From IMG/VR virus record IMGVR_UViG_3300032240_001991, positions 124,001 to 188,000 of that record: a DNA stretch of 64,000 nt, one strand, 5' to 3'. The position numbers and the translations under genes are program-made. Positions 1,929-60,565 of the stretch are shown here, piece after piece. The notes below the pieces were generated by a model. It was not told the DNA's origin. It was given only the letters and a program-made list of their open reading frames with translations, and made no database searches. Numbering within the stretch: position 1 is the first letter of the stretch; every line of letters begins with the position of its first letter.

Positions 1929-1974
1929 GTGCAGGGTAGACCAGCACTATTTTTAACAATTAAGGAGTAGATCC
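1928..1974 (+). promoter_or_regulatory. twin GUAGA-loop hairpin leader, copy 2
   Basis: AGTGC-A-GG-GTAGA-CC-A-GCACT (compensatory change relative to copy 1), then GGA-GTAGA-TCC over the SD. Confidence 0.75.
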
Positions 1975-1976
1975 AA

Positions 1977-8658: not shown

Positions 8659-9013
8659 TATTTTTCAAAACGATCAAGAAAGTGTTTTATTTTTTGATCT
8701 TTCTAGTGAAGAACAAGATTCTGTTATCCAATGGTTAACAAAGAATGATTTGACTATTAACATATATTTTTATCAAGGGGAAGTTAACATTCCTTGGTTG
8801 CTACATTCTTTATCTTGTTCAACCTACAAATATGTTAACATTGACAATATGTCAGCAGTAACTAGTCACATGTCTAGTTATATATTGGCAAAAAATAATG
8901 TTTTTTATAGTACAAAAGATGTTAATATATCTGAACTATACAGTTACATTAATAATAACCGTGTTACTGATGCGGTTGATTTTTTAAAGAAGGTGTTCAG
9001 TGTCAGCCGATAA
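8624..9013 (+). CDS. hypothetical protein
   Basis: overlaps both neighbours, operon-like. Confidence 0.65.
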   Translation: MTAKITLITPPDIFQNDQESVLFFDLSSEEQDSVIQWLTKNDLTINIYFYQGEVNIPWLLHSLSCSTYKYVNIDNMSAVTSHMSSYILAKNNVFYSTKDVNISELYSYINNNRVTDAVDFLKKVFSVSR

Positions 9014-10235
9014 ACATACTTGCGACTTCTGCGGAAAAGAAAAACAAGACGTAGAAAAACTGATTGTTGGAGATACTTCAGCAATCTGCAATGATTGCGT
9101 TGACTTGTGTATTTCTATACTCAACGAAGACAAAATAAAGAAATTTCCCGTTGAAGATAACAAAGAAATCTTTAATCCTACTAAAATTAAAGAATATCTT
9201 GACCAATATGTTGTAGGGCAAGAGCAGGCTAAAATTGCATTGAGCGTTGCGGTTTGTCAGCATTTTAAAAGAACGTTTAAACCAAATAAACACATTGAGC
9301 TTGATAAAACCAATGTGCTTATTTTAGGACCTACTGGATGCGGTAAGACCATGCTAGCTCGTAAGTTAGCAGAATATCTAGAGGTTCCCTTTGCTATCTG
9401 TGATGCTACTGGACTAACAGAAGCCGGATACGTTGGTGATGACGTCGAAACAATCCTTGCTCGATTGATTTCAGTAGCTAACGGTGATATTGAAAAAGCA
9501 CAGCACGGAATCATCTATATTGACGAAATTGACAAACTAAGCAAGAAAGGTGAGAATGTTAGTACCACTCGAGATATTGGTGGAGAAGGTGTACAGCAAT
9601 CATTATTGAAGATGATTGAAGGTGCTGTTGTACGTGTTCCTGCTACTGATAAGCGGAAGCATCCTCGTGGAGAAATGCTTGAAATTGATACTAGTGGTAT
9701 ACTTTTTATCTGCGGCGGAGCATTTGTTGGTTTAGAAAAAATTATTGAGCGTCGTAATGATCCAAATACTTCTATTGGATTTAGTGCTACCATACAGTCT
9801 AAGACAGAAACTGCAATTAACTATCATAGTGTAACTACTAAGGATTTAATTAACTTTGGTTTGATTCCAGAGTTTGTTGGTCGTTTTGGACTTATAACCA
9901 GTGTTGAAGAATTGTCTACTAAAGACCTGGTTAAAATCCTTAAAGAGCCAAAAAATAGTCTGCTTGCCCAATACAAATATCTTTTTGAAATTGATGGAGT
10001 TGATTTAATTTTTGAAGATGAAGCATTGAGTAAAATTGCAGACGAAGCTAAGAAGCTTAAGACCAATGCAAGAGGATTAAAAAATATTTTAGAAAAGATT
10101 CTTTTACCATATCAGTTTGAATCTGTGGACCTTGTTAGTAGGGGCCTCGATAAAATTATGATAAGTAAAGAAGCTGTAGCAGGAAAGCCTGCAGAGCTTA
10201 TTTTTAGGAAAACCAAAACAGAAAAAAGCCTATGA
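9000..10235 (+). CDS. clpX: ATP-dependent Clp protease ATPase subunit ClpX
   Basis: CDFC..ICNDC zinc finger, [20 protein letters not shown] and IGF loops. Confidence 0.96.
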
Positions 10236-13334: not shown

Positions 13335-14735
13335 ATGAATATGTTTGTAGAAGCAGTCAAAGAAGTACAAATTGAAACTCGTACCGCAAACGGTATGAAG
13401 ACTTTTGACTCCAGCAAGAACAGTCTTGTTGACTTGTTCTTCTCAATTGGCGCTAGCCGTGGTAAGGACCTCAGTGCTGAGTTCCATCGTGCGCTAGCTG
13501 AAGATGAAACGCTAGCACTTCGCTTGCTCATGTGGGCTCGCGATGTTCGTGGTGGGGCAGGTGAGCGCGATGTTGTTCGCACTATCTTGCTCAGTCTTGA
13601 GAAGAAGGATCCGGATGTGTTGGTGCGAGTACTTCCGCATCTTGCAGAGTTTGGTCGCTGGGACGATCTGTTGATTTTTGAAAAGAACGCTGAGATTCGT
13701 ACTCAGGCCTACTCACTTATCGATGCAGCACTTAAAGCTGGTAACGGCTTGTGTGCTAAGTGGATGCCTCGTAAGGGCGAACAGGCTGCTCGTTTGCGTG
13801 TAGGTCTAGGCATGAGTCCTAAGACCTATCGTAAGACTCTGGTTAATTTGACCAAGGTTGTTGAGCAGAATATGTGCGCTAAAAACTGGACTAACATTAA
13901 CTACAACCATGTTCCAAGCTTGGCTGCTAGCCGTTACCAGAAGGCGTTTAAGAAGCACGATCCTGAGGGCTATGAAGAATATGCTTCTAAGCTTGGAAAG
14001 GGCGAGGCTAAGATTAACGCTGGTGCAGTATATCCATATGATATCATCAAGGCACACAATGCCGGTGGTGATAGCAAGGTTGTTACTGCGCAATGGGAAG
14101 CATTGCCTAACTACGTTGGCGATGAGTTAATCTTGCCGATGGTAGACGTGTCGGGCTCTATGAGTTCTCCAGTTGGCGGCAACAAGAACTTGACTTGCAT
14201 GGATGTTTCGGTTAGCTTGGGCTTGTACCTTGCTGATAAGAATACTGGTCCGTTTAAGGACATGTTCTTAACTTTCTCAACTACTCCCGAGCTGCAAGTT
14301 CTTAAGGGTAACCTCATTAAGAAAATTGCACAGCTTCAGAAGGCAGAGTGGGGAATGAGCACTAATCTTAATGAGGCATTTAAGTTAATTCTTGATTATG
14401 CCGTTAAGGGCAAAGTTGCACCTGAGGACATGCCTAAGTATGTGCTGATCTTGTCGGACATGGAGTTTAACCAGTGCGCTGAATTCAACGACTCTGCTAT
14501 GCAGATGATTGAGCGTAAGTATGATAAGGCTGGTTACGAAATTCCAAAGATTGTGTTTTGGAATCTGAATGCGAGAGCAGGGAATGTTCCGGTTAAGCAC
14601 AATGACAAAGGCGTTGCTCTAGTCTCAGGCTTTAGCCCGGCGATTATGACTTCGATCTTGGCTGCAGAGGACTTTACTCCGTCAGCAGTAATGTTGAAGA
14701 CTTTAAATAGTCCACGTTACGCAGTAATTGCGTAA
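13335..14735 (+). CDS. TROVE/Ro60-related DUF2828 protein with C-terminal vWA domain
   Basis: RDVRGGAGER, GRWDD, AKWMPR, vWA MIDAS DVSGSM, ILSDMEF, VFWN, SGFSP. Confidence 0.85.
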   Translation: MNMFVEAVKEVQIETRTANGMKTFDSSKNSLVDLFFSIGASRGKDLSAEFHRALAEDETLALRLLMWARDVRGGAGERDVVRTILLSLEKKDPDVLVRVLPHLAEFGRWDDLLIFEKNAEIRTQAYSLIDAALKAGNGLCAKWMPRKGEQAARLRVGLGMSPKTYRKTLVNLTKVVEQNMCAKNWTNINYNHVPSLAASRYQKAFKKHDPEGYEEYASKLGKGEAKINAGAVYPYDIIKAHNAGGDSKVVTAQWEALPNYVGDELILPMVDVSGSMSSPVGGNKNLTCMDVSVSLGLYLADKNTGPFKDMFLTFSTTPELQVLKGNLIKKIAQLQKAEWGMSTNLNEAFKLILDYAVKGKVAPEDMPKYVLILSDMEFNQCAEFNDSAMQMIERKYDKAGYEIPKIVFWNLNARAGNVPVKHNDKGVALVSGFSPAIMTSILAAEDFTPSAVMLKTLNSPRYAVIA

Positions 14736-50363: not shown

Positions 50364-50438
50364 AGACATATGGTGTAACGGTAGCACGCACCCAATTTTT
50401 GGGCGCGCCGAGGTGAAGGTTCAACTCCTTCTATGTCG
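50364..50438 (+). ncRNA. tRNA-like element or degenerate tRNA
   Basis: GACATA/TATGTC acceptor, D-arm GTGT..GCAC, T-arm GAAGG-TTCAACT-CCTTC, abnormal anticodon arm, no CCA. Confidence 0.6.
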
Positions 50439-50473
50439 TGCGGATAACCATCAAATAAAAAACCGCACTTTTT
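50438..50473 (+). terminator. putative terminator
   Basis: GTGCGG/CCGCAC stem with a large loop then TTTTT. Confidence 0.5.
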
Positions 50474-50493
50474 AAAAAATAAATATAGAAATT

Positions 50494-51600
50494 ATGATAC
50501 TATTATCTAACGTTAAAATTACTAATATTCCACTTTATCCTTCTCCTAATAGACATTTACTTCGAGGTAAACTTTTTACTAATCCAGACAGAATGGATAT
50601 TTGGAAATATACGTTAGCAAGTTACGTTCCTTTAATGCCCCTCATAAGCAAAGTTATACTTTATATTGATCTAGCCACAACTGAATATGCAGGTCAGGAG
50701 CCCTTATTAGAGACTTATATAAGATCATTATTTCCAGAAGATAAATTGATTCTTCGCTGGTATAGAAACAACAGTACCGCAGATTGGCGTAGATCGTGTG
50801 AAGAAGATGTTTTTCCAATAGACGATGACTTAATCTTCAATCTAACAAACGATGATCATGTTTTTATTGATAAAAATTTAGATATCTTAAATGCGACTAT
50901 AAACCATTTGACTAGGTGTGAAGATCCTTATGCGCAAATTATCTATAGCCATTGGCCAGAAGTTATACGACACGCAGCTAATAACGGATTTCAAATTTCA
51001 GAAGATTTAACATGTGTTTATGGCAGGTTTCGTTCTATTGAAAGTTTTGATATAGTTAAAAAAGAAAGATGGCGACACTACTGGTTTGACCATGACTTTG
51101 GAGAGGCTAATAATGTTTTTCGACCAGATGAACATTTATGTGTTGCCGGAACTTTGCCACATGGTTCAACAGTTTTTTTTCCAATACGTGAATTGTCTAG
51201 GCACTTTGACGGATACGAATATGCTGGTGCTTTTATGAATTTAGCACCTCCATTAGATATTCCTCAAGGTTTCTTTGAAAAAAATATCAAAATAGCATAC
51301 GGCTATTCTGATCTTAAAGAAGGTTATACCAATATAAATCCATCATATCCTTACTTTAAAGCATCTACTGGAATTGGAATGGATTATAGATTTTCTTTAG
51401 AAGATATTCCTGCTGCATGGTTTGATAGAATTAGCGAAATAAGTATAAACCCTAACGCCGACTTAGAATATTTAAAAAAGTGTCGTGATCAACTTTATTA
51501 CGATATGGCGTGCGCCGATGCGCGAGGTCCGCATGTACAAGCAGTGACACATCCTTTCCCAAAAGAAATATTTAAAAATCAATTTTTATCAAAACAATAG
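50494..51600 (+). CDS. hypothetical protein (possible GT-A fold)
   Basis: 368 aa ORF, NDDH motif, TAAATA box upstream. Confidence 0.7.
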   Translation: MILLSNVKITNIPLYPSPNRHLLRGKLFTNPDRMDIWKYTLASYVPLMPLISKVILYIDLATTEYAGQEPLLETYIRSLFPEDKLILRWYRNNSTADWRRSCEEDVFPIDDDLIFNLTNDDHVFIDKNLDILNATINHLTRCEDPYAQIIYSHWPEVIRHAANNGFQISEDLTCVYGRFRSIESFDIVKKERWRHYWFDHDFGEANNVFRPDEHLCVAGTLPHGSTVFFPIRELSRHFDGYEYAGAFMNLAPPLDIPQGFFEKNIKIAYGYSDLKEGYTNINPSYPYFKASTGIGMDYRFSLEDIPAAWFDRISEISINPNADLEYLKKCRDQLYYDMACADARGPHVQAVTHPFPKEIFKNQFLSKQ

Positions 51601-51605
51601 TTTAT

Positions 51606-51681
<76 letters not shown>

Positions 51682-51685
51682 ATTT

Positions 51686-51759
51686 GCCCAATTAGCTCAA
51701 AAGTAGAGCGCACGACTGATAATCGTAAGACGGAGGAGCGTTACCTCCATTGGGCACCA
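51686..51759 (+). tRNA. tRNA-Ile(GAT)
   Basis: ACGA-CTGATAA-TCGT, atypical T-loop AGCGTTA, CCA. Confidence 0.85.
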
Positions 51760-51765
51760 ATTTAT

Positions 51766-51840
51766 GGGTCTGTAACTCAGAGGCAGAGTAGCCGCCTCTT
51801 AAGCGGTAAGTCGAGATTTCAAAATTCTCCAGACCCACCA
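51766..51840 (+). tRNA. tRNA-Lys(CTT)
   Basis: GCCGC-CTCTTAA-GCGGT, CCA. Confidence 0.9.
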
Positions 51841-51843
51841 ATT

Positions 51844-52575
51844 TTACCAATTGCCAAAATTACCAATACCTATGTTGTAGTTAAATTGACTATCTGGTGT
51901 TTGAATGTTGTTTTTTAATAAGTGCCATCCTAGCATACTTTCAGCGGTAATAGGGATTCCTTCTAGAGTATATTGATCAATGTAATCAAACACACTAGCA
52001 TATTTGCTCATTGTATGGCTTTCGCCAATAGCAAAATTATCGTTCACCGGATTTAAAGTTTGTCCTATGGGTACAAATCCTAATCTGCCATTTGACGGCA
52101 TAATTAAAGATTCCATAGACTGTTGCTGTAGCCATTCTTTTGCTCGATCTAAATAAATGTCTCGATCAATGGTACCGTCGGCTCTGCTGCGTATTACTAA
52201 ATCATATGCTCCAAAGATAGATTCGTATTTTTCTCTTATTTGATTTACAGATTTAATTCCATTATACATGGTCCAAACATTCTTTGGATTAGCAATGTCC
52301 ATTACATGATAGCATTTGTTACTATCAAACACTGGCATATTGACTATATCTAGGCTAGCTATAAAATGATTGTTTGGTAAACAGGATACTAACATTTGAT
52401 ATAGAGTTGATCGATCATTATTCCATTTTGGAGAAATTCTATTGTCGTGCTGGTGACTAGAACTCCATAAATAGAAGAACCAATCTACCTGATTATAATT
52501 TTTTAAATGACCTATTAAAGAATTAAAATTTTCTGTAAATCGAGGAAGTCCAGAAACTATGATTGCAACTTTCAT
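51844..52575 (-). CDS. putative glycosyltransferase-like protein, SGxPR family
   Basis: MKVAIIVSGLPRF, YDLVIRSRAD, NDNFAIG. Confidence 0.6.
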   Translation of the reverse strand: MKVAIIVSGLPRFTENFNSLIGHLKNYNQVDWFFYLWSSSHQHDNRISPKWNNDRSTLYQMLVSCLPNNHFIASLDIVNMPVFDSNKCYHVMDIANPKNVWTMYNGIKSVNQIREKYESIFGAYDLVIRSRADGTIDRDIYLDRAKEWLQQQSMESLIMPSNGRLGFVPIGQTLNPVNDNFAIGESHTMSKYASVFDYIDQYTLEGIPITAESMLGWHLLKNNIQTPDSQFNYNIGIGNFGNW

Positions 52576-53107
52576 GAATCTATTTAATGGCTATACAAAT
52601 AGTGTTGTAAAAAAATTCCAAGATAAGTTTGTTCAACCTATGGACTTACATTTTGATCCCAGTTTATTATTAGCAGAATATCTTAGAAGTAGACACATAG
52701 ATAATGTACCAGACTATTACGATACTTGGGAAGCGTATAATCAAGGATTCCATAATCATCATATCGAGTATAATGCTCCTTACCTACAAGTAGTTTGCAA
52801 ATTATTACAGCCTAAATTGAAATTTAATTATGTTTTATACAGAACTATTCCTCCCCGTACAACCCTATCATGGCACACAGACCAAGATTGTGCCACATGG
52901 TCGTATCATATTCCTCTTATGACCAATTCAGGGTGTTACTTTGCTACCGAAGTAAGCAATTACTCTTTAAGAAATTGTGGACAAATGTATAAAGTAAACA
53001 CACAAATTTTACATACGTTTTTTAATGCTGGGAATGAACCCAGAGTTCACTTGCATTTTATCTATGATTTACAAGGTAGATACACTAGCGGGAAATTTCG
53101 TAGATAA
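52559..53107 (+). CDS. 2OG-Fe(II)/aspartyl-asparaginyl beta-hydroxylase-like protein
   Basis: WHTD, HIPLMTN, HTFFNAG..PRVHL; start codon uncertain. Confidence 0.7.
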   Translation: MIATFMNLFNGYTNSVVKKFQDKFVQPMDLHFDPSLLLAEYLRSRHIDNVPDYYDTWEAYNQGFHNHHIEYNAPYLQVVCKLLQPKLKFNYVLYRTIPPRTTLSWHTDQDCATWSYHIPLMTNSGCYFATEVSNYSLRNCGQMYKVNTQILHTFFNAGNEPRVHLHFIYDLQGRYTSGKFRR

Positions 53108-53110
53108 TTT

Positions 53111-53184
53111 GCTCTCATAGTATAAAGGTATTACACCGCTTTGGTAAAGCGGAAACACAGGATCGATACCTGTTGAGAGCACCA
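53111..53184 (+). tRNA. tRNA-Thr(GGT)
   Basis: CCGCT-TTGGTAA-AGCGG, T-loop ATCGATA, CCA. Confidence 0.88.
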
Positions 53185-53193
53185 AACATCAAT

Positions 53194-53269
53194 GGTGACA
53201 GTAGATCAATGGTAGATCCCCGGATTGTGATTCCGGTCGTTGTGGGTTCAAATCCCATCTGTCACCCCA
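53194..53269 (+). tRNA. tRNA-His(GTG)
   Basis: encoded G-1, CCGGA-TTGTGAT-TCCGG, CCA. Confidence 0.92.
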
Positions 53270-53277
53270 AAAATAAA

Positions 53278-53353
53278 GCCCTTGTAGTGAAATGGATTAT
53301 CACGCTACTCTACGAAAGTTGTATTCTAGGTTCAAATCCTAGCAAGGGCGCCA
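53278..53353 (+). tRNA. tRNA-Arg(ACG)
   Basis: loop CTACGAA, TTCAAAT T-loop, GCCA end. Confidence 0.88.
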
Positions 53354-53359
53354 AATAAC

Positions 53360-53388
53360 TTGACATAGTAATTTATTGGTGCTATATT
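53360..53388 (+). promoter_or_regulatory. sigma70-type promoter for tRNA-Ser
   Basis: TTGACA-17-TATATT. Confidence 0.65.
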
Positions 53389-53412
53389 CATTTGTATAAT
53401 TATAAGATTAAC

Positions 53413-53502
53413 GGAAGCGTGGTCGAGAGGTTTATGGCTCTAGTCTTGAAAACTAGCGAAGGTTAATGCCTTCCGTAGGTTCAAATCCTACCGCTTCCGC
53501 CA
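53413..53502 (+). tRNA. tRNA-Ser(TGA)
   Basis: CTAGT-CTTGAAA-ACTAG, long variable arm, GCCA. Confidence 0.93.
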
Positions 53503-53548: not shown

Positions 53549-53914
53549 ATGAACCTGTTAATACTACTGTTTATGTTACAACTCAAGCATTATTATGCTG
53601 ATTTTGTAATACAAACTTACGAACAAACTATCAAAAAAGGTATCTACGGAAACAAATGTGGTATTAGCCATAGCTTTGATCACATTTGGTATTCCTGGGT
53701 TGTGTTGTTGATCTATAGTCTATTTTTTCACGTTAGTTACTGGATTGTTTTAATACTTCCTTTAATTGAAGGAATTATACATTACCACATTGATTACTGT
53801 AAAGTACACTATGGAACAAAGGATATGAAGAATCCGTTGTTCTGGAATCAATTTGGGCTGGATCAATTAGGCCATCAATTAACCTACATAGGTATGGTTT
53901 GGTATCTATTATAA
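53549..53914 (+). CDS. DUF3307-like membrane protein
   Basis: KHYYADF, HYHIDYCK, FW..FGLDQ..H. Confidence 0.8.
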   Translation: MNLLILLFMLQLKHYYADFVIQTYEQTIKKGIYGNKCGISHSFDHIWYSWVVLLIYSLFFHVSYWIVLILPLIEGIIHYHIDYCKVHYGTKDMKNPLFWNQFGLDQLGHQLTYIGMVWYLL

Positions 53915-53976
53915 CCCAAGAGATCTTGCTATAAAATATCATTAAATATTGGTGATACGGGGAGAGTATCACTGAT

Positions 53977-54456
53977 ATGAAAAAGGTATTAACTTTACTT
54001 CTAGTCTCATTGCCACTTAGTGCAATGTCCGCAGAACTTATATACGAGTTCAAAGATCCTGCCTTTAACGGTATAGGATGGAGCAGCCACGCTCTAACGA
54101 TTGAGAGTATTGAAAAAAGTCGCCGTGATTCTATCAAGGCAGAAAAACAGGCAGAGATAGATAAGCTAGCAGCAGAAGCAGCTAATACTCCGTTAAACAG
54201 ATTTATGGCTTTATTTCAAAGTCAAGTTTACGCACAATTAGCTACACAACTATCAAACAATTTATTTAAAAATAACTGTAACGCTAGTGATGGAACTGCT
54301 ATTCCAGGTTGTGTAAATCCAGTAACCGGTACGTTTCAACTTGATGGCAACACAGTGACTTGGCTCAAAGGTGTTGATAGTGTTACATTAACTGTAGTTG
54401 ATAGTAACGGTACTATTACTAAGATTGAAGTACCAATTGCTAGTTTTGCCTTTTAA
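53977..54456 (+). CDS. csgF: curli assembly protein CsgF-like
   Basis: signal peptide then ELIYEFKDPAFNG; adjacent to csgG. Confidence 0.75.
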   Translation: MKKVLTLLLVSLPLSAMSAELIYEFKDPAFNGIGWSSHALTIESIEKSRRDSIKAEKQAEIDKLAAEAANTPLNRFMALFQSQVYAQLATQLSNNLFKNNCNASDGTAIPGCVNPVTGTFQLDGNTVTWLKGVDSVTLTVVDSNGTITKIEVPIASFAF

Positions 54457-54459
54457 CTT

Positions 54460-55290
54460 ATGAATATACTACAAAAAATATTAATAGTTATCATGGCTGT
54501 AGGACTAACTGCATGTAATACCTTTAGGCCTTTGCAGAACCCTAACCACGGAAGCCAGGCTCGACCAGTAAGTGTAGCCGCTAAGGCATTTAGTAAGGTA
54601 CCAGCTCCAGCTGGTCCTCCAGTGATAGTAGCCGTATACGGATTTAAAGATTTAACTGGACAAAGAAAAAGCAGTAGCACAGTTAGCAGTTTTAGTACCG
54701 CAGTAACACAAGGTGCTGATGCTTACCTAGTTAAGACCATGATGGATGTTGGAAACAGTCAATGGTTTACTGTAGTTGAGCGTGTAGGTTTAGATAATTT
54801 ATTAAAAGAACGTCAAATGATCAAGCAGACACGCGAAATCTACGAAGGTGATAAAGCGCGTATGCTACCGCCTATGAGCCTCGCTGGTGTAATAGTAGAA
54901 GGTGGAATCGTTGATTATAACAGTAATATCTTAACAGGTGGCACAGGTGCACGTATGTTAGGTATTGGACCTTACACCAAGTACAGCCAAGACGTTGTAG
55001 TAATTAATTTACGATTAGTTAGCGTAAGTAACGGTGAAGTATTACTAAGCGTAACTATCGAAAAGAACTTATTGAGTACTAACGATAGTATCACTGCATT
55101 AAAGTTCTTTAATCAAAGCACAGAAGCTTTTGAATTTGATTCTGGACAGGCTTATAACGAGCCTGCCAATTATGCATTAAGATCTGCAATTGAACAAGGA
55201 GTTGTAGAGCTTATAAAACAAGGTGAGAAAAAAGGTTTGTGGAAATACAAATCAAAAGATAGTCCAATAACAGGAGAGGTTAAGAAATGA
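54460..55290 (+). CDS. csgG: curli secretion channel CsgG-like lipoprotein
   Basis: lipobox LTAC, VAVYGFKDLTGQRK, STAVTQG, WFTVVER.GL.NLLKERQ. Confidence 0.9.
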   Translation: MNILQKILIVIMAVGLTACNTFRPLQNPNHGSQARPVSVAAKAFSKVPAPAGPPVIVAVYGFKDLTGQRKSSSTVSSFSTAVTQGADAYLVKTMMDVGNSQWFTVVERVGLDNLLKERQMIKQTREIYEGDKARMLPPMSLAGVIVEGGIVDYNSNILTGGTGARMLGIGPYTKYSQDVVVINLRLVSVSNGEVLLSVTIEKNLLSTNDSITALKFFNQSTEAFEFDSGQAYNEPANYALRSAIEQGVVELIKQGEKKGLWKYKSKDSPITGEVKK

Positions 55291-56078
55291 GACAGTATAT
55301 CGCAGCAGCACTGATGATTGCTAGCCTGCCAGCGTTAGCAGATGTTACTCCAGTAACTCCGCCTGCAGCACCAACGATTCCCGTAACTGCTACGGTCAGT
55401 CCAAATGCTACAGCAGCTTTAGCTGAAGGTTCAACAAACAGTGTTTTTATTAATCAGTCAGGCGAAAATCCTAATGTTAATATTGAACAGACCGGTGCAG
55501 GTAACAAATTAGGAACTCAGGGTTCCCCAGTACTACTAAATGGTCGTGATCAAGTAGTCATTACTAAACAGGTTGGTAGCAACAACTCAGTTGCGCTATC
55601 TGTAACAAATGACACCACTGGTAACAATGTAGGTGCTACTACCGTAATTCAACAGATTGGAAACATGAACACTGTTGATGCAGCATGTGGCAACGGTACA
55701 ACCAGCGGCGGAGTTGGTCTAACCAACTGCCGTAACGCTAACTTAAACTGGAAATTTACAGGAAATTCAAACAGCCTGCAATTTCGCGGAACAGGTAATA
55801 ATGTTGATAGTGCCATTACAGTAAGTGGTAGCAGTAACAGCTTTGGTATTGATGCAGTTGGAAATAATCACAGCGAAACACTTATGGTTAGCGGTGATCA
55901 AAACTCCTTTAACATCAGTCAGAAGAGCACAGGTGCTGCAGGAAGCAGTGTATTGTTTGATCTAACAGGTACAGCTAACTCTGTAACTGTCAGCCAAGGC
56001 GGCAGTGTTGACAACGTGCTAAATGTTAGAAGCACAGCCAACACCGGCGTATGGAATATCAAACAAGGAAATCAATGA
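55287..56078 (+). CDS. curlin-repeat protein (CsgA/B-like)
   Basis: signal peptide, repeated Q.G..N and G.SN motifs. Confidence 0.75.
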   Translation: MRQYIAAALMIASLPALADVTPVTPPAAPTIPVTATVSPNATAALAEGSTNSVFINQSGENPNVNIEQTGAGNKLGTQGSPVLLNGRDQVVITKQVGSNNSVALSVTNDTTGNNVGATTVIQQIGNMNTVDAACGNGTTSGGVGLTNCRNANLNWKFTGNSNSLQFRGTGNNVDSAITVSGSSNSFGIDAVGNNHSETLMVSGDQNSFNISQKSTGAAGSSVLFDLTGTANSVTVSQGGSVDNVLNVRSTANTGVWNIKQGNQ

Positions 56079-57151
56079 AGTGGATAGCAGCAATTGCTAT
56101 TCTTTTTTCAGTATCGGCTCAAGCAAGTATTGGGTCAATAACTGATCTAAATGGTGCTGCCACGATTAAACGTGGCAGTGCTATTTTTACTGCTGCCAAA
56201 GGTGCAGCAATAGAACAAAATGATCGCGTTGAAACTAAAAACGGTAAAGTAAAAATTACCTTCAACGACGATACTACTGTAAGCGTAGCAGAGCATAGCA
56301 GCTTAATAATAGACGACTTTGTTTATGATCCTAAGTCTGGGGCCGGCAAATTAGGTCTTAAAGCAGCTGGCGGAACTGTTAGATATGTCAGTGGCGCTAT
56401 AGCTCACAAAAATCCAAACGCGGTTAATATTACTACACCAACTGCTGCTATTGCTGTTCGAGGAACAGACTTCGTAATGAGCGTAAATGAGATTGGTAGT
56501 AGTATGGTTATTCTTATGCCTAGCTGCGAGAATGGAGGATTAGGCGAAGTATGCACTAGCGGAGCAATTGATGTTGAAAGTGGTCCTAATACTGTTAGCA
56601 TGAATCGTCCTTATCAGGCAACGCTAGTAGAGTCAACTGGACAACCTCCAACTCCACCTATTACTGTAAATTTATTTGCTACACCTGTAGGAAATAATCT
56701 TCAAATAAGCCCACCAAAAACTGAATCAGGTCAGAACGTAGTTGCTGCCGCAAGAGCTGCTGCACAAGCATCTGGTGTTACAAAAAATAGCAATACTAAA
56801 GATCCTTCCCCCGAACAACAAGCTGTAGCAACTGCTGCTCCTGTAACTCCCACAGCAGAAGTACAAACAAATACCAAGGTGCAAACAACTGCACAACAAG
56901 AGATTGTGGTAACAGCGACTAAATCTAATAAGGATCCCTACCTATTAATAAAATGGGGAGATTCTGCGCAAACACAGCAGATTGGTTGGATATATGAAAG
57001 TATTAGTCCTAGCGGATTACATTACGAAAATGTTGATCTGCCAACTGATACTAATATTACTATCTGGGTTAGCCAAGACGGTGAAGGACACGGATATGCG
57101 TTTAGTCCATCGCCACAGGGAAGAATCAACATTATTCAAAGGTCAAACTAA
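56075..57151 (+). CDS. FecR-domain secreted protein
   Basis: signal peptide, F.DDT, IDDFVYDP, TPTAAIAVRGTDF. Confidence 0.85.
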   Translation: MKWIAAIAILFSVSAQASIGSITDLNGAATIKRGSAIFTAAKGAAIEQNDRVETKNGKVKITFNDDTTVSVAEHSSLIIDDFVYDPKSGAGKLGLKAAGGTVRYVSGAIAHKNPNAVNITTPTAAIAVRGTDFVMSVNEIGSSMVILMPSCENGGLGEVCTSGAIDVESGPNTVSMNRPYQATLVESTGQPPTPPITVNLFATPVGNNLQISPPKTESGQNVVAAARAAAQASGVTKNSNTKDPSPEQQAVATAAPVTPTAEVQTNTKVQTTAQQEIVVTATKSNKDPYLLIKWGDSAQTQQIGWIYESISPSGLHYENVDLPTDTNITIWVSQDGEGHGYAFSPSPQGRINIIQRSN

Positions 57152-57810
57152 TGAAAACTTTAATTTTTTTTATTTTTTTATTTTTTTGCTCTTATAGCTG
57201 GGCAGACGTTAATTCTATTAATGTTAACCAAACCGCTGGAAATAATAACTTAGTTACTATTAAGCAAAGTACAAAAAATAGTGCCAGTTCAAATTCAATA
57301 GACATAACACTACAAGGAGATTCAAATAATCTCAATATTTCTCAAAGTGATATGAACGTTAACGATAACGGAGGTCATGTTGCTGTACTTGATGTGCAAG
57401 GTAATTCTAATAACATAACTGTACAACAAAACAATCGTGGCGGATCAAATAGTGGTCATTCTACTGATAACACAGTAACAGGCAACGGTAATCAAGTGTC
57501 AATTACACAATCAGGAAATTTAGAAAAAAGTTTAGTTGAAAATATTCTTGGTGACAATAATATTACATCGGTTGAACAACATGGCGCAGGAATACATTAT
57601 GCTGATATCACATTAACTGGGAACGGCCACTCTGTAACTGTGTCTCAAAGAGACGAAGGAACACATAACGCTACCATCAACTTAACTAATGTAGGAGGAT
57701 CTAGTACAGCAACCTTAGTACAGACTGGAAATACTCCTCAAACTATAAGTATAGAACAACAATGTGCAAATTTATCAGGTTGTTCAGTAAACGTAACTCA
57801 GAGTCATTAA
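57151..57810 (+). CDS. curlin-repeat protein (CsgA/B-like)
   Basis: signal peptide, G..N...I.Q repeats. Confidence 0.75.
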   Translation: MKTLIFFIFLFFCSYSWADVNSINVNQTAGNNNLVTIKQSTKNSASSNSIDITLQGDSNNLNISQSDMNVNDNGGHVAVLDVQGNSNNITVQQNNRGGSNSGHSTDNTVTGNGNQVSITQSGNLEKSLVENILGDNNITSVEQHGAGIHYADITLTGNGHSVTVSQRDEGTHNATINLTNVGGSSTATLVQTGNTPQTISIEQQCANLSGCSVNVTQSH

Positions 57811-57811
57811 C

Positions 57812-59854
57812 ATGAAGAAAATATTACTTAATCCGTGGTGGTCACTTTTAACATTAGTAGCCATTGTGCTGGTTAGAATTTGGGATCCTAGTTTTGTTGA
57901 AAGCGTAAGATTAAGATATTTTGATCAATTAGTTACAAGTCGTCCTACTACAGAAATTCCGGTCAATGTTGTAAATGTAGACGAAGCTGCATTAGACAAA
58001 TATGGTCAATGGCCGTTTAGTAGAGATGTGTATGCTGATATAATTAAGGAGCTTTACGCTAGGAACGCAGGTCTAGTAGTTTTTAACGTACTGATGCCCG
58101 AGGCCGATCGTTTTAAGCAAGATGCCGTCCTCAGCAAAACCATGCAGGAATATCCTGTGGTACTACCCACACTAGGCAACAATAAGCAGAAAAATACTAG
58201 CGTAATAGCTCCAGCTACTGTAATAGGCGCTGATCCAAAAGGATTAGTTGCAGAATATCCTGGATTGATCGCTAATGTTCCTGAACTAGAACAGGCTGCT
58301 GTGGGTGTAGGAGTGGTTAATACTTTTCCTGAAATTGACGGCGTTGTTCGTCGTACTCCGTTAGTAATTTATAGTCAAGAGCATTTGAGACCAAGCCTTG
58401 CCCTAGAGGTGTTGCGTGTAGCAGCAGGGGATGCGGCTTTTCAAATCAAGCTAGACGAGAACGGCGTTAATGCTTTACGTATTCCTCAATTTGGTAAAAT
58501 AACCACAGACAATATAAGTAGAGTCTGGATTGATTGGAGTCAACGCCCAAAGAGTTATAGTCTCGCTAATCTTCCTAAAGATTTTAATAAACAGATTGTT
58601 ATAGTGGGTGCCAGTGCGGCAGGTATTGCTAATCCTGTAGCGACTAGTCGAGGTGAAATTTGGCCTCAAGATTTACAAGCATCAGTTATTGGAACTATGC
58701 TAGCCGGTTCTACCATTCAACGACCTGCATACGCTGACGCTTTAGAATTAGGCGTTCTAATTACGGCTGGCATTATATTAATTGTATTAGCAAGGTGGTT
58801 ATATGTAGGTATTGTGGCTACAGTAATTTTTGCTGTTGGCGGTGTATTAGGTAGTATGTATGTTTATCAACACTATCTATTTTTATTTGATGCTACTACT
58901 TTTACCGCAGGCATAATCTTAATTGCATTACACGCTTACATGGTAAAATTTCTAGATGAGTTTTTTCAGAAGCAAATGATTAGAAAACAATTCCAAAGTT
59001 ATCTAAGTCCAGACCTAGTCGCTAAACTAATTAAAGATCCAAGCCTACTAAGATTAGGTGGTGAAGAAAAAGAATTGAGTATTATGTTTACTGATGTTCG
59101 TGGGTTTACTGCAATTAGCGAACACTACGGTAAGAATGTACAAGGGCTAACGTCTATTATGAATCGCTATATGACTGCAATGACTAAAAGAATACTAGAG
59201 AATGACGGAACTCTAGACAAATATATTGGCGATGCTCAAATGGCATTTTGGAACGCTCCGCTTGATGAATCTAAGCACTGCAAAGATGCTGTTAAAAGTG
59301 CCTTAGATATGTTAGGAGACCTAGAGAAATTTAACAAGGAAGTTGAACTAGAAGGTGTTCCTCCTTTTGGTATGGGTATTGGAATTAATACCGGTGTAGT
59401 TGTAGTAGGTAATATGGGGTCTGAACAAAGGTTTGATTATACCTGCTTAGGTGACGCAGTAAATCTTGCTAGTAGACTTGAAGGACAAAGCAAAAACTAC
59501 GGTGTCCTAATTGTATTAGGCCCGGTTACTGCTGATCGTGTTAAAGACGAATACCAAGTTATAGAACTTGATTGCATTGCAGTCAAAGGAAAAACACAGG
59601 GTGTAAACATATTTACTGTGTTAGGTCCAATAGGTTGCGTAAGTCAAGAAGATGTAGACTTGCATAATCAAATGCTGTCTTATTATAGGGCAACAGATTT
59701 TAATACTGCAATAATATTATGTAATTCGTTAAAAGGAAAACTTAACGGATTAATGGATCAGTATTACGACATGTGGATGCAACGTTGCGAAGATATGAAG
59801 TGGACTACCTTATCAGAAGACTGGGACGGAGTATATCGAGCTACTTCAAAATAA
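57812..59854 (+). CDS. CHASE2-domain class III adenylate/guanylate cyclase
   Basis: GQWPFSR CHASE2, TM helices, FTDVRGFT, DKYIGDA, GDAVNLASRLE. Confidence 0.93.
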   Translation: MKKILLNPWWSLLTLVAIVLVRIWDPSFVESVRLRYFDQLVTSRPTTEIPVNVVNVDEAALDKYGQWPFSRDVYADIIKELYARNAGLVVFNVLMPEADRFKQDAVLSKTMQEYPVVLPTLGNNKQKNTSVIAPATVIGADPKGLVAEYPGLIANVPELEQAAVGVGVVNTFPEIDGVVRRTPLVIYSQEHLRPSLALEVLRVAAGDAAFQIKLDENGVNALRIPQFGKITTDNISRVWIDWSQRPKSYSLANLPKDFNKQIVIVGASAAGIANPVATSRGEIWPQDLQASVIGTMLAGSTIQRPAYADALELGVLITAGIILIVLARWLYVGIVATVIFAVGGVLGSMYVYQHYLFLFDATTFTAGIILIALHAYMVKFLDEFFQKQMIRKQFQSYLSPDLVAKLIKDPSLLRLGGEEKELSIMFTDVRGFTAISEHYGKNVQGLTSIMNRYMTAMTKRILENDGTLDKYIGDAQMAFWNAPLDESKHCKDAVKSALDMLGDLEKFNKEVELEGVPPFGMGIGINTGVVVVGNMGSEQRFDYTCLGDAVNLASRLEGQSKNYGVLIVLGPVTADRVKDEYQVIELDCIAVKGKTQGVNIFTVLGPIGCVSQEDVDLHNQMLSYYRATDFNTAIILCNSLKGKLNGLMDQYYDMWMQRCEDMKWTTLSEDWDGVYRATSK

Positions 59855-59855
59855 A

Positions 59856-60152
59856 TTACTTATTATCTTCTCGGTTAATGCGCATTTCAGCTTGAATACG
59901 TTCTTTCTCAATGCGTTCGCCTCGCAATTGCAAAGCTGTTTCTACTTTTTGATTAAGTCTTATCATATCGTTATCTAGCATACGAATACGATCAATAAGA
60001 GCAATAAGTGTTCCCATAGCTTGATCAACAACAGGAGCAATTTCGCTAGTAGCCCAGGTCCAGACATAATAAACAAAGTATCCCATACCGCCTGCTGCAA
60101 TAATAGGAAATCCGTATTGATTAATTGCTTTTACTAAAGATGTTCCGTCCAT
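59856..60152 (-). CDS. small membrane/coiled-coil protein
   Basis: YGFPIIAA TM; LIDRIRMLDND. Confidence 0.7.
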   Translation of the reverse strand: MDGTSLVKAINQYGFPIIAAGGMGYFVYYVWTWATSEIAPVVDQAMGTLIALIDRIRMLDNDMIRLNQKVETALQLRGERIEKERIQAEMRINREDNK

Positions 60153-60157
60153 TTTAA

Positions 60158-60436
60158 TTAATCCTTACGTTGGTCTGCTTGATCTGCTCGAGCAATACGA
60201 TTAAAATCTGGCTGTAACCCTAATGCATGACTAACCTTTACATCAATACGATGTAGATCATTATTCATTGTATCTACTCGAGTATCTAACCCTTTAATAA
60301 TATTACCCATGCTGCTAACACTAGACGTTACTCCGGCTAGAATAAATTTAAGAGTAAGGAATACAAAATAGCCTGCTGCTAGAGCCGCAGCAATTGGAAA
60401 CCCAACATCAGTTACTATACTTAAAAATTCATCCAT
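60158..60436 (-). CDS. small membrane/coiled-coil protein, paralogue of 59856
   Basis: VGFPIAAA TM; LDTRVDTMNND. Confidence 0.7.
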   Translation of the reverse strand: MDEFLSIVTDVGFPIAAALAAGYFVFLTLKFILAGVTSSVSSMGNIIKGLDTRVDTMNNDLHRIDVKVSHALGLQPDFNRIARADQADQRKD

Positions 60437-60565
60437 TTTTTATTTCCTCTAAATATTTACCAAGGTTTGAAAGGTTTAAAAATTGGTATAAAATAGATTG
60501 CAATTTAAATTGAAATAAATTAAACTTGGTATATATTCATAAATATTTACAAATAGGAAACATTT

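What the first reader, a model, noticed from the sequence alone, without database searches (positions are those of the whole stretch)
53977..59854. Complete curli-like secretion and signalling cassette: csgF-csgG-curlin-FecR-curlin-CHASE2 cyclase
Seen: six tightly coupled genes behind a TAAATA box. Known: csgF/csgG-like genes have been reported in some aquatic myoviruses. Inference: coupling a CsgG pore and curlin-repeat proteins to a FecR protein and a CHASE2 cyclase suggests a trans-envelope sensor that sets cAMP/cGMP in the infected cell, not just amyloid export.
Basis: partly seen in the sequence, partly recalled or inferred. Interest (0 to 1): 0.62.

Follow-up and report, generated by a model that had tools for sequence, protein, structure and literature searches.

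The report
Phage curli operon with cAMP cyclase
A giant phage carries a compact operon for a curli (amyloid-fibre) secretion pore, two fibre subunits, a periplasmic FecR-domain protein and a membrane sensor adenylate cyclase; this cassette is already published for marine SAR11 phages, so this is a new carrier lineage, not a new system.

Summary
Six co-directional, translationally coupled genes (53977-59854) encode CsgF, the lipoprotein CsgG, a curlin-repeat protein, a secreted FecR-domain protein, a second curlin, and a CHASE2 class III cyclase.

The cyclase keeps every catalytic residue. Its specificity residues (Lys470, Thr527) predict cAMP, not cGMP.

The TAAATA box is a real, conserved, oriented promoter-like motif.

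Two paralogous small membrane-protein genes (59856-60436, minus strand) belong to the same module in nearly all relatives.

The cassette is not new. The same gene order is annotated in Pelagibacter phage HTVC008M and Methylophilales phage Melnitz. Zaragoza-Solas et al. 2022 (PMC9599517) described the viral T8SS with FecR and the cyclase.

Three things are new here:
- The carrier is a ~330-kb jumbo phage whose capsid protein resembles those of the GAP32 and CBB jumbo phages. It is not a pelagimyophage.
- The cassette joins two bacterial modules that lie apart in Alphaproteobacteria: csgF-csgG-curlin operons, and a giant RTX adhesin with an N-terminal FecR domain followed by a CHASE2 cyclase.
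- The TAAATA motif marks the starts of the transcription units.

A trans-envelope link between fibre and cAMP is plausible but untested. The one complex prediction gave no verdict.

The parts
53943..53948 (+). TAAATA promoter-like box, 34 nt upstream of the csgF start codon
   Evidence: Read directly. It is enriched and oriented upstream of genes genome-wide (88 versus 17 genes). Its position is conserved upstream of csgF in 33/56 viral relatives and absent before csgG and curlin 2, rare before curlin 1 and FecR. Temporal class is unknown; the capsid gene has no such box.
53946..53978 (+). 13-bp RNA hairpin with the GGGGAGA Shine-Dalgarno sequence in its loop; it pairs the first two bases of the csgF AUG
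   Evidence: strand folding gave -19 kcal/mol, z -3.46, 1 of 200 shuffles as good. This form is not conserved in relatives, where hairpins more often enclose the TAAATA box.
53977..54456 (+). csgF: secreted CsgF-like T8SS component (159 aa)
   Evidence: PF10614 E 7e-11 and phrog_35372 E 9e-35. N-terminal hydrophobic signal segment at residues 4-23. No PDB sequence match.
54460..55290 (+). csgG: outer-membrane lipoprotein pore of the curli (type VIII) secretion system (276 aa)
   Evidence: PF03783 E 5.7e-48. Full-length alignment to E. coli CsgG 3x2r at E 1.4e-44, with the lipobox Cys and the FSTAV constriction motif aligned.
55287..56078 (+). Curlin-repeat subunit 1 (263 aa, signal peptide, N/G/S/T-rich, about eight strands ending in Q)
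   Evidence: Pfam Curlin_rpt only at E 0.073. Profile match to the curlin 2 family at 99.4%. AF2 pLDDT 79.7 with a regular beta-solenoid. Best PDB match is CsgA 8c50, Z 19.0. Strand motifs.
56051..57151 (+). Secreted FecR-domain protein (likely true start 56075): signal peptide, FecR/PupR-like beta domain (residues ~27-205), ~110-residue disordered linker, small C-terminal beta domain
   Evidence: PF04773 E 1.9e-10. AF2 model. PupR C-terminal signalling domain 6ovk Z 15.1; adhesin anchoring domain 5ix9 Z 7.0, 27% identity over 73 residues. Alignment A2 shows the N-domain is conserved and the linker is variable.
57151..57810 (+). Curlin-repeat subunit 2 (219 aa, signal peptide, about ten strands ending in Q, C-terminal Cys pair)
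   Evidence: PF07012 22.8 bits, above the 20.7 cut-off, six stretches. Alignment A5. Strand motifs.
57812..59854 (+). Inner-membrane receptor adenylate cyclase: TM1, periplasmic CHASE2, three TM helices, class IIIb cyclase domain, ~80-residue C-terminal tail
   Evidence: PF05226 E 9e-39 and PF00211 E 2.3e-20. Hydrophobic segments at 3-29 and 306-381. D428, K470, D474, T527 and R555 are invariant and N551 nearly so in 29 viral homologues. Best PDB relatives are adenylate cyclases 6fht, CyaB 3r5g and CyaC 1wc0.
59856..60152 (-). dn98: small membrane protein (98 aa), paralogue of dn92; N-terminal hydrophobic GFPI...GY segment followed by a charged helix
   Evidence: phrog_18771 E 1.3e-31. Next to the cassette in 68 of 82 viral loci; the rest are truncated contigs. 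Alignment A7. Its stop codon lies 1 nt from the cyclase stop codon, convergent.
60158..60436 (-). dn92: small membrane protein (92 aa), first gene of the dn92-dn98 pair
   Evidence: phrog_18771 E 9.5e-32. Among isolated phages it occurs only in Melnitz and HTVC008M. 2581 metagenomic homologues, all unnamed. Weak YvrJ resemblance, 6 of 30 members, best E 0.004.
60454..60459 (-). Second TAAATA box, 23 nt upstream of the dn92 start codon
   Evidence: read in the window, and present upstream of dn92 in 36/60 relatives.
53549..53914 (+). DUF3307 membrane protein gene directly upstream, with its own TAAATA box; linked to the cassette only in the closest relatives
   Evidence: PF11750 E 6.3e-7 and phrog_2470. 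Adjacent to csgF in L007-L009, L015 and L085 only. Box reported.

Best explanation
This is a virus-specific envelope module that the phage expresses in its Gram-negative host.

Shown from sequence:
- CsgG (a lipoprotein) and CsgF are the parts of a type VIII secretion pore in the outer membrane.
- Two Sec-dependent curlin-repeat beta-solenoid proteins are its likely cargo.
- A soluble periplasmic FecR-domain protein and a four-helix inner-membrane CHASE2 class IIIb adenylate cyclase are encoded in the same translationally coupled unit.
- A conserved pair of small membrane proteins always lies next to the unit.

Inferred:
- The infected cell exports curlin fibres to its surface.
- The FecR-domain protein acts as a periplasmic adaptor. 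The solved FecR/PupR domain couples an outer-membrane protein to an inner-membrane transducer in the same way. Here it would report the state of the pore or fibre to the CHASE2 domain.
- The cyclase turns that cue into cAMP, which host cAMP receptors read.

Origin: the FecR-cyclase pair comes from alphaproteobacterial operons in which the FecR domain sits at the N-terminus of a giant type I secreted RTX/cadherin adhesin. That is the position of the periplasm-retained end in LapA-type adhesins. The pair therefore looks like a surface-fibre-coupled cAMP unit that phages moved from a type I adhesin onto curli.
For: - Gene identities and intact motifs.
- Translational coupling.
- A conserved promoter-like box only at the heads of the units.
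- At least 594 viral stretches encode relatives of the cyclase.
- The order csgF-csgG-curlin-FecR-(curlin)-cyclase is kept at 25-68% protein identity in 61 of 80 loci. The four tested exceptions hold csgG on the same contig.
- All viral cyclases form one clade apart from Alphaproteobacteria (SH-aLRT 99-100).
- About 30 of 79 bacterial homologue loci have a FecR-domain ORF nearby, 26 of them upstream on the same strand. Four of five larger ones scanned (900-2500 aa) have N-terminal FecR plus RTX, three also cadherin/Big_9, one BapA_N; a sixth, 653 aa, only FecR.
- The FecR fold matches the PupR signalling domain (Z 15.1) and the MpIBP/LapA-type anchoring domain 5ix9 (Z 7.0, 27% identity). The role of 5ix9 is taken from bioRxiv 10.1101/198937.
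- Precedent for an outer-membrane protein acting upstream of CHASE2 cyclases: NsrA with CyaK/CyaD1/D2 in S. meliloti (PMC7529298).
- The published view treats FecR and the cyclase as selected parts of the viral T8SS region, with transcripts detected (PMC9599517).
Against: - No experiment exists for any viral copy.
- The FecR/CHASE2 complex prediction gave no verdict (score 0.00).
- In bacteria the two modules are never adjacent, so the cyclase works without CsgG there.
- In S. meliloti the FecR-domain gene smc02177 beside cyaD1 was not required for signal perception. It is a target of cAMP-Clr, so FecR could be an output rather than an input.
- No CsgE or CsgC is present, so secretion competence is assumed, not shown.
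- No RNA run holds the locus.
- Buchholz et al. saw no clumping of Melnitz-infected cells.
Confidence: 0.55

Rival explanations
1. Two independent host-takeover modules share one transcription unit. The curli genes change the cell surface. Separately, the FecR-CHASE2 cyclase pair raises cAMP in response to some unrelated periplasmic cue, to reprogramme host metabolism. On this view there is no signalling between the fibre or pore and the cyclase.
For: - The modules are separate in bacteria.
- FecR directly precedes the cyclase in many viral loci, as it does in bacteria.
- A TAAATA box lies before the cyclase in 26/67 relatives, which suggests it can be transcribed on its own.
- In four records the cyclase is 13-18 kb from csgG.
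- The complex prediction gave no support.
Against: - Every informative viral record that has the cyclase also has csgG nearby.
- In this lineage a curlin gene lies between the FecR gene and the cyclase gene, with 1-nt junctions.
- The whole block moved between unrelated virus families as a unit (PMC9599517).
Confidence: 0.25
2. The CsgG/CsgF complex is a repurposed pore, acting as a pinholin, a secretin or an uptake channel that times lysis or imports molecules. On this view the curlin-like genes are not fibre subunits. This is the proposal of Buchholz et al. 2022 and of Zaragoza-Solas et al. 2020.
For: - No CsgE gate is present.
- No clumping was seen in Melnitz cultures.
- The always-adjacent dn92/dn98 pair has a holin-like layout: an N-terminal membrane segment and then a charged helix.
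Against: - Two curlin-repeat genes with signal peptides are conserved inside the operon. The earlier papers had not recognised them.
- An outer-membrane pore cannot depolarise the inner membrane.
- The dn92/dn98 family has no significant match to any holin family.
Confidence: 0.12
3. FecR acts as in the ferric citrate system, as an iron-responsive regulator that ties the cassette to iron or siderophore uptake. PMC9599517 suggested this.
For: The Pfam name, and the fold match to the PupR/FecR periplasmic domains.
Against: - The protein has a cleavable signal peptide. It has no transmembrane or cytoplasmic anti-sigma part.
- The record encodes no STN signalling domain or TonB-receptor plug.
- The bacterial counterparts are adhesin N-termini and LysM-FecR proteins paired with CHASE2 sensors, not iron systems.
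Confidence: 0.05

Closest known systems
Viral T8SS (curli) region with FecR and adenylate cyclase of Pelagibacter/OM43 phages: HTVC008M gp014-019, Melnitz genes 99-104, and HTVC023P-type podoviruses (PMC9599517, PMC7029224, PMC9004378)
   Same: The gene order csgF-csgG-curlin-FecR-curlin-cyclase is identical. The two small phrog_18771 genes are adjacent. CsgE is absent. The cyclase falls in the same viral clade.
   Different: Protein identity to the isolates is only 34-47%. The carrier is a ~330-kb jumbo phage whose capsid protein is 68-71% identical to GAP32, CBB, XaC1, Phosso and Vibrio 2.275.O phages, not Kyanoviridae. The small-gene pair is convergent downstream here, not upstream. There is no histidine kinase.
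Bacterial curli / type VIII secretion operons (E. coli csgBAC-csgDEFG; alphaproteobacterial csgF-csgG-curlin loci)
   Same: CsgG, CsgF and curlin-repeat subunits are present. CsgG is 40-48% identical to alphaproteobacterial CsgG, and those loci have the same csgF-csgG adjacency.
   Different: There is no CsgE, CsgC or CsgD. The bacterial loci have no FecR or CHASE2 cyclase within 10 kb.
Alphaproteobacterial operons of a giant FecR-domain RTX adhesin followed by a CHASE2 adenylate cyclase (Bradyrhizobium, Afipia, Methylobacterium, Curvivirga and others)
   Same: These hold the nearest cellular homologues of the cyclase (35-37% identity, full length). A FecR-domain gene lies immediately upstream on the same strand.
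   Different: There the FecR domain is the N-terminal part of a 900-3065 aa cadherin/Big/RTX protein that is type I secreted by its architecture. Those genomes have no CsgG. In the phage, FecR is a 360-aa Sec-exported protein beside curlin genes.
S. meliloti clr-cyaD1-smc02177-smc02178 locus and the NsrA to CyaK/CyaD1/D2 cAMP cascade
   Same: CHASE2 receptor adenylate cyclases lie beside a FecR-domain extracytoplasmic protein. An outer-membrane protein is required upstream of the cyclases.
   Different: It uses a plant-derived signal and has a dedicated Crp-type receptor (Clr) next door. smc02177 was not needed for perception. No curli genes are involved.
LapA/MpIBP retention module with LapD/LapG (c-di-GMP-controlled adhesin anchoring)
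   Same: A folded N-terminal domain stays in the periplasm while the fibre is outside. The system is coupled to a cyclic nucleotide. FecR residues 24-118 superpose on the anchoring domain 5ix9 (Z 7.0, 27% identity).
   Different: Signalling in Lap is inside-out through proteolysis. No LapG or LapD was looked for here. The similarity is modest, and the phage protein is not a type I substrate.

Membership tests
Type VIII (curli) secretion system | CsgG outer-membrane lipoprotein channel | tested here: met
   PF03783 at 163.5 bits against a 20.8 cut-off. Full-length match to E. coli CsgG at E 1.4e-44, with the lipobox Cys and the FSTAV loop aligned.
Type VIII (curli) secretion system | CsgF accessory protein encoded beside CsgG | tested here: met
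   PF10614 at 42.8 bits against a 25.8 cut-off. The gene ends 3 nt before csgG.
Type VIII (curli) secretion system | Secreted curlin-repeat subunits (CsgA/CsgB type) | tested here: met
   Subunit 2 passes the Pfam Curlin_rpt cut-off (22.8 versus 20.7). Subunit 1 matches subunit 2's family at 99.4%, and its model's best PDB match is CsgA 8c50 at Z 19.0. Which one nucleates and which is the major subunit was not resolved.
Type VIII (curli) secretion system | Periplasmic accessory factors CsgE and CsgC (enterobacterial type) | tested here: not met
   PF10627 and PF10610 were not found in the 327-kb record, while the E. coli control was positive.
Type VIII (curli) secretion system | Amyloid fibre formation on the cell surface | not testable with these tools
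   Needs Congo red or ThT binding, or electron microscopy, of expressing or infected cells.
Viral T8SS-FecR-cyclase cassette (Zaragoza-Solas et al. 2022) | Gene order csgF-csgG-csgA/B-FecR-(csgA/B)-adenylate cyclase on a phage genome | tested here: met
.
Viral T8SS-FecR-cyclase cassette (Zaragoza-Solas et al. 2022) | Components fall in the viral clade, apart from cellular homologues | tested here: met
   Cyclase tree: all viral rows lie on one side of a branch with SH-aLRT 100, apart from 25 of the 26 alphaproteobacterial rows. The 26th row, L122, a 2.2-kb MAG contig, falls on the viral side. Only the cyclase was tested.
Viral T8SS-FecR-cyclase cassette (Zaragoza-Solas et al. 2022) | Carrier is a pelagimyophage (Kyanoviridae-like) or an HTVC023P-type podovirus | tested here: not met
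   The capsid protein is closest (68-71% identity) to 288-470-kb jumbo phages such as GAP32, CBB, XaC1, Phosso and Vibrio 2.275.O. Four related cassette-bearing records are 250-344 kb.
Class III adenylate cyclase, subclass IIIb | Two metal-binding Asp, transition-state Asn and Arg | tested here: met
   D428, D474 and R555 are invariant and N551 nearly so in 29 viral homologues. They align with CyaB 3r5g and the cyclase of 6fht. Assigning roles to these residues rests on established knowledge of class III cyclases.
Class III adenylate cyclase, subclass IIIb | Adenine-specifying Lys plus Thr (instead of Asp) | tested here: met
   K470 in the DKYIGD motif and T527 in the GINTG motif are invariant. 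The same motifs are present in the aligned adenylate cyclases. Enzyme activity is not testable here.
FecR/FecA/FecI cell-surface signalling | FecR-type periplasmic beta domain | tested here: met
   PF04773 E 1.9e-10. PupR C-terminal signalling domain 6ovk at Z 15.1, 133 residues, rmsd 2.6.
FecR/FecA/FecI cell-surface signalling | N-terminal cytoplasmic anti-sigma domain and a membrane anchor | tested here: not met
   The only hydrophobic segment is the N-terminal signal peptide (residues 12-30), and the folded domain follows directly. Pfam finds no other domain.
FecR/FecA/FecI cell-surface signalling | Partner TonB-dependent transducer with an STN signalling domain | tested here: not met
   No STN (PF07660) or Plug (PF07715) domain in the record. 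A host-encoded partner cannot be excluded.
LapA-type adhesin retention module | Fold of the N-terminal anchoring domain | tested here: inconclusive
   5ix9 at Z 7.0, 73 of 76 residues aligned, 27% identity, rmsd 2.3. This Z is within the range the tool flags as possibly a common arrangement.
LapA-type adhesin retention module | Part of a type I secreted RTX adhesin | tested here: not met
   The phage protein has a Sec signal peptide and no RTX repeats. The feature is met only by the bacterial neighbours of the cyclase homologues.

The most novel reading that the evidence does not exclude
The FecR-domain protein is the periplasmic end of a surface fibre, equivalent to the retention module of LapA-type adhesins. 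Its folded N-domain would stay under the CsgG pore while its long disordered linker and small C-terminal domain reach the curlin fibre. The CHASE2 cyclase would read the position or load of that domain. The phage would then give its host a contact or aggregation sensor that converts fibre engagement with neighbouring cells or particles into cAMP. The same logic would operate in the giant FecR-RTX adhesin/CHASE2 cyclase operons of Alphaproteobacteria. No paper in the searched library describes that pairing.
Probability: 0.15. Interest if true: 0.75.

Novelty: new member of a known kind. Interest (0 to 1): 0.4.

Why it matters
No viral curli cassette has been tested experimentally. It is abundant in aquatic viromes: at least 594 viral contigs hold relatives of the cyclase here, and a published estimate puts phage curli proteins at about 0.1% of assembled viral proteins. 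It gives hosts a function they otherwise lack.

This copy shows that the block also lives in ~330-kb jumbo phages with GAP32-type capsids. That is a third viral lineage and points to strong selection on the whole block.

The split origin gives a concrete, testable model. It joins a curli operon with an adhesin-FecR/CHASE2 cyclase pair, which suggests how a surface fibre could be wired to cAMP. It also points to a little-studied bacterial signalling pair that can be tested genetically in culturable Bradyrhizobium, Afipia or Methylobacterium.

Tried and rejected
- **FecR/CHASE2 complex prediction.** FecR residues 26-230 were folded with CHASE2 residues 25-330, using 29-row alignments. The result was no verdict (score 0.00; controls not run). 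It counts neither for nor against binding.
- **FecR C-terminus as a curlin repeat.** All homologues end in an I-x-I-x-Q strand, as the curlins do. Profile comparison gave only 6-12% probability, so this is not supported.
- **TAAATA box as a chance hexamer.** I first judged it so from raw counts. I rejected that view after the orientation, intergenic and cross-locus tests.
- **TAAATA box as a T4-type late promoter.** Not established. The full TATAAATA motif is rare, and the capsid gene has no box.
- **Near-identical DNA in isolated phages.** None found.
- **Sigma-70 promoter and terminator scan.** Nothing decisive.
- **Function of dn92/dn98.** Pfam, PDB and the large protein search gave only a sub-threshold YvrJ resemblance, coiled-coil noise and unnamed metagenomic homologues.
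- **Expression.** No RNA run holds the locus. Read laying was not run, because only DNA contigs were on offer.
- **Foldseek on the curlin 1 model.** No significant match. The exhaustive aligner was needed.
- **CsgF in the PDB.** No sequence match.

Full report
**What is there.**
The window is bases 124001-188000 of a 326,658-bp IMG/VR virus record. Pfam gives:
- CsgF, E 7e-11.
- CsgG, E 5.7e-48.
- Nothing for the third ORF.
- FecR, E 1.9e-10.
- Curlin_rpt, 22.8 bits against a 20.7 cut-off.
- CHASE2 (E 9e-39) plus Guanylate_cyc (E 2.3e-20) for the last ORF.

The third ORF is also a curlin. Its family profile matches the family of the fifth ORF with 99.4% probability (E 4.7e-22). Its AF2 model (pLDDT 79.7) is a regular beta-solenoid. 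An exhaustive comparison with 48,161 PDB chains ranks Pontibacter CsgA first (8c50, Z 19.0, 200 residues, rmsd 8.7). Generic beta-helices follow at Z 17.6 or less, and the E. coli CsgA fibril scores Z 11.7.

CsgG aligns over its full length with E. coli CsgG (E 1.4e-44), including the lipobox cysteine and the FSTAV constriction motif. CsgF, both curlins and the FecR protein have N-terminal signal-type hydrophobic segments.

The gene junctions are a 3-nt gap, two ATGA overlaps, a 1-nt overlap and a 1-nt gap. The second ATGA overlap implies that the FecR gene starts at 56075 rather than 56051.

**The cyclase.**
The protein has one N-terminal hydrophobic helix, a ~300-residue CHASE2 domain and a hydrophobic block at 306-381, read as three helices. 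The cyclase domain and an ~80-residue tail follow. By this topology CHASE2 is periplasmic and the catalytic domain is cytoplasmic.

In 29 viral homologues D428, K470, D474, T527 and R555 are invariant and N551 nearly so. They lie in the FTDVRGFT, DKYIGD, GINTG and NLASRLE motifs, which also occur in the closest solved adenylate cyclases (6fht, P. aeruginosa CyaB 3r5g, Spirulina CyaC 1wc0). From established knowledge of class III cyclases, these are the two metal-binding Asp, the adenine-specifying Lys/Thr pair of subclass IIIb, and the transition-state Asn/Arg.

The predicted product is therefore cAMP, not cGMP. The record has no second cyclase or CHASE2 protein and no cNMP-binding protein.

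**The FecR protein.**
The AF2 model has three parts:
- a confident N-terminal beta domain, residues ~27-205, pLDDT above 90;
- a disordered stretch at about 210-321;
- a small C-terminal beta domain, pLDDT about 72.

The N-domain matches the periplasmic C-terminal signalling domain of the anti-sigma regulator PupR (6ovk, Z 15.1) and a Bacteroidales FecR homologue (4m0n, Z 13.9). Residues 24-118 also superpose on 5ix9 (Z 7.0, 73 of 76 residues, 27% identity). That entry is the cell-surface anchoring domain of the Marinomonas ice-binding adhesin, and it was the template for the LapA retention module.

The phage protein has no anti-sigma or membrane part. The record encodes no STN or TonB-plug domain. 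It is therefore not a FecR/FecA/FecI system, and the iron-regulator reading offered in the literature is unlikely.

**Already known.**
PHROGs holds families for CsgF, CsgG, FecR and the full-length cyclase. tblastn finds the same proteins only in Pelagibacter phage HTVC008M and the Methylophilales phage Melnitz strains, at 34-47% identity. Both are annotated with the same six-gene order.
- Zaragoza-Solas et al. 2020 reported the curli cluster in pelagimyophages.
- Buchholz et al. 2022 proposed that CsgGF is a lysis-timing pore.
- Zaragoza-Solas et al. 2022 described the full viral T8SS with CsgA/B, FecR and an adenylate cyclase. They noted that the second curlin and the cyclase are more frequent in myoviruses. 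They also reported that FecR and the cyclase are not in bacterial T8SS operons, that transcripts exist, and that the block moved between virus families.

The finding as written is thus a rediscovery.

**Synteny, tested independently.**
A scan of viral contigs found at least 594 stretches that encode relatives of the cyclase.
- Among the best 80 loci, 61 hold csgG in the fetched stretch, almost always as csgF-csgG-(curlin)-FecR-(curlin)-cyclase.
- In four records with no csg gene within 10 kb of the cyclase, csgG lies 13-18 kb away on the same contig.
- Most of the other loci that lack csgG are short or cut contigs; a few with long flanks (L063, L076-L078) were not followed up.

The reverse holds in bacteria.
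- The nearest cellular cyclase homologues (35-37% identity) are alphaproteobacterial. None of 79 such loci has csgG, csgF or a curlin within 10 kb.
- Five of those genomes have no CsgG anywhere.
- In a sample of 401 alphaproteobacterial genomes, seven carry CsgG at 40-48% identity to the phage protein, with csgF and curlins beside it. None of them has FecR, a CHASE2 cyclase or the small membrane genes within 10 kb.

**Where the FecR-cyclase pair comes from.**
About 30 of the 79 bacterial loci have a FecR-domain ORF near the cyclase, 26 of them upstream on the same strand and many ending within about 200 nt of the cyclase start. Most of these ORFs are 900-3065 aa with the FecR domain near residues 100-240. 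Four of five larger ones scanned also have C-terminal RTX repeats, three cadherin-like or Big_9 repeats, and one a BapA prefix-like domain; a sixth, 653 aa, showed only FecR.

That is the architecture of type I secreted giant adhesins, with FecR at the position of the periplasm-retained end.
- A search of the paper library found no paper that combines these terms.
- LysM-FecR proteins paired with CHASE2 histidine kinases are described in Burkholderia.
- In S. meliloti the CHASE2 cyclase gene cyaD1 (SMc02176) and the FecR-domain gene smc02177 carry consecutive locus numbers, so they are taken here to be adjacent. There smc02177 is a cAMP-Clr target that is not needed for perception. The outer-membrane protein NsrA is needed upstream of the cyclases.

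The viral cassette thus looks like a fusion of a curli operon with an adhesin-coupled cAMP pair.

**Extra parts.**
Two paralogous genes for ~95-aa membrane proteins lie next to the cassette in 68 of 82 viral loci (both match phrog_18771). In this window they are 59856-60152 and 60158-60436 on the minus strand. They are either upstream of csgF on the same strand or, as here, convergent just after the cyclase. Among isolated phages they occur only in Melnitz and HTVC008M.

Their function stays open. The evidence is a sub-threshold YvrJ resemblance and 2581 unnamed metagenomic homologues.

**The TAAATA box.**
I first took the box at 53943-53948 for chance. It is not.
- In this genome TAAATA lies within 60 nt upstream of 88 of 379 called genes, against 17 for the reverse motif. 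115 of its 252 copies sit in the 8.4% of the DNA that is intergenic.
- Across the viral loci it precedes csgF in 33/56 and dn92 in 36/60 distinct upstream regions. It almost never precedes the internal genes. It also precedes the cyclase gene in 26/67 relatives, though not here.
- A second copy lies 23 nt before dn92 in the window.

The capsid gene lacks the box, so its temporal class is undetermined. A 13-bp hairpin (53946-53978) presents the ribosome-binding site in its loop.

**The carrier.**
- The record encodes a T4-type capsid protein. It is 68-71% identical to those of jumbo phages of 288-470 kb (Vibrio 2.275.O, Sinorhizobium Phosso, Xanthomonas XaC1, Cronobacter GAP32, Pectobacterium CBB). 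It is not closest to Kyanoviridae.
- None of those isolates has the cassette.
- Four other cassette-bearing IMG/VR records of 250-344 kb have capsid proteins 74-94% identical to this one. One has terminal repeats and is rated 100% complete.
- In a cyclase tree all viral sequences form one clade (SH-aLRT 99-100), apart from 25 of the 26 alphaproteobacterial rows; the 26th, a 2.2-kb MAG contig, falls on the viral side. The capsid-confirmed jumbo records are scattered through that clade, and Melnitz and HTVC008M sit at its base.

The cassette is thus long established in a jumbo-phage lineage. A library search found no paper that links jumbo phages with curli genes.

**Mechanism and verdict.**
Shown:
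- the gene identities and intact catalytic and secretion motifs;
- tight coupling and a conserved promoter-like element;
- strong viral synteny and the split bacterial origin.

Inferred:
- fibre export;
- FecR as a periplasmic adaptor between pore or fibre and CHASE2;
- cAMP as the output, read by host receptors.

The single complex prediction gave no verdict, and no RNA data hold the locus.

My estimates for the readings are:
- integrated fibre-plus-cAMP module: about 0.55;
- two independent co-located modules: about 0.25;
- a repurposed pore: about 0.12;
- iron sensing: about 0.05.

Overall this is a new member, in a new carrier lineage, of a published kind of viral cassette.

Noticed in passing
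window 50364-53499 (tRNAs); whole record G000:C1: A cluster of tRNA genes lies directly upstream of the cassette. ARAGORN finds 31 tRNAs in the record. Several ORFs listed in this stretch overlap tRNA genes and are probably not genes.
   Followed up: partly
G000:C1:121241-121629 (L187:735-1116), just upstream of the window: A two-piece (permuted) tmRNA gene. It scores best as the betaproteobacterial type (RF01850, 130.6 bits; RF04321, 148.1 bits). Melnitz also carries a two-piece tmRNA. This may hint at the host group.
   Followed up: partly
G000:C1 both ends (bases 1-60 and 326599-326658): Both contig ends are collagen-like Gly-X-Y coding repeats, so the assembly probably broke inside one repeat gene. 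CheckV's 36% completeness looks too low, because relatives of 328-344 kb are rated 92-100% complete.
   Followed up: partly
L017, L070, L052, L038, L056, L014, L008 (upstream of csgF): In many relatives the TAAATA box sits in the loop of a strong GC-rich hairpin (-14 to -25 kcal/mol over the fragment). This may be a combined terminator and promoter, or a regulatory element.
   Followed up: no
window 59852-59858: The cyclase stop codon and the stop codon of the convergent small gene dn98 are 1 nt apart. With no room for terminators, the transcripts from the two strands must overlap.
   Followed up: no
window 873-3350: NAD salvage genes: a cytidylyltransferase-like/NUDIX fusion (873-1928) and a nicotinamide phosphoribosyltransferase (1977-3350).
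   Followed up: no
window 9000-10235 and 13335-14735: A ClpX-like AAA+ unfoldase with its zinc finger, and a DUF2828/DUF7788 protein.
   Followed up: no
window ~21349-41913, minus strand: A long run of co-directional genes. Three were scanned: an HAD-nucleotidyltransferase fusion, a nucleotidyltransferase-kinase fusion and a thiamine-pyrophosphate enzyme. It looks like a sugar or surface-polysaccharide modification cluster. GC skew changes sign at its borders.
   Followed up: no
L014, L016, L017, L021, L022, L070 (beside the cassette): Some relatives have a second, distant (22-28% identity) match to the cyclase protein next to csgF. It is probably the CHASE2 histidine kinase reported for podovirus cassettes. 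This record has none.
   Followed up: no
L086 (RGCF01000015.1, 'Bacteroidetes' MAG) and L122 (2.2-kb 'Rhizobiaceae' MAG contig): These two contigs are filed under bacterial MAGs. L086 carries the full eight-gene viral cassette, and the L122 cyclase falls on the viral side of the tree. Both are probably phage contigs binned with bacteria.
   Followed up: partly
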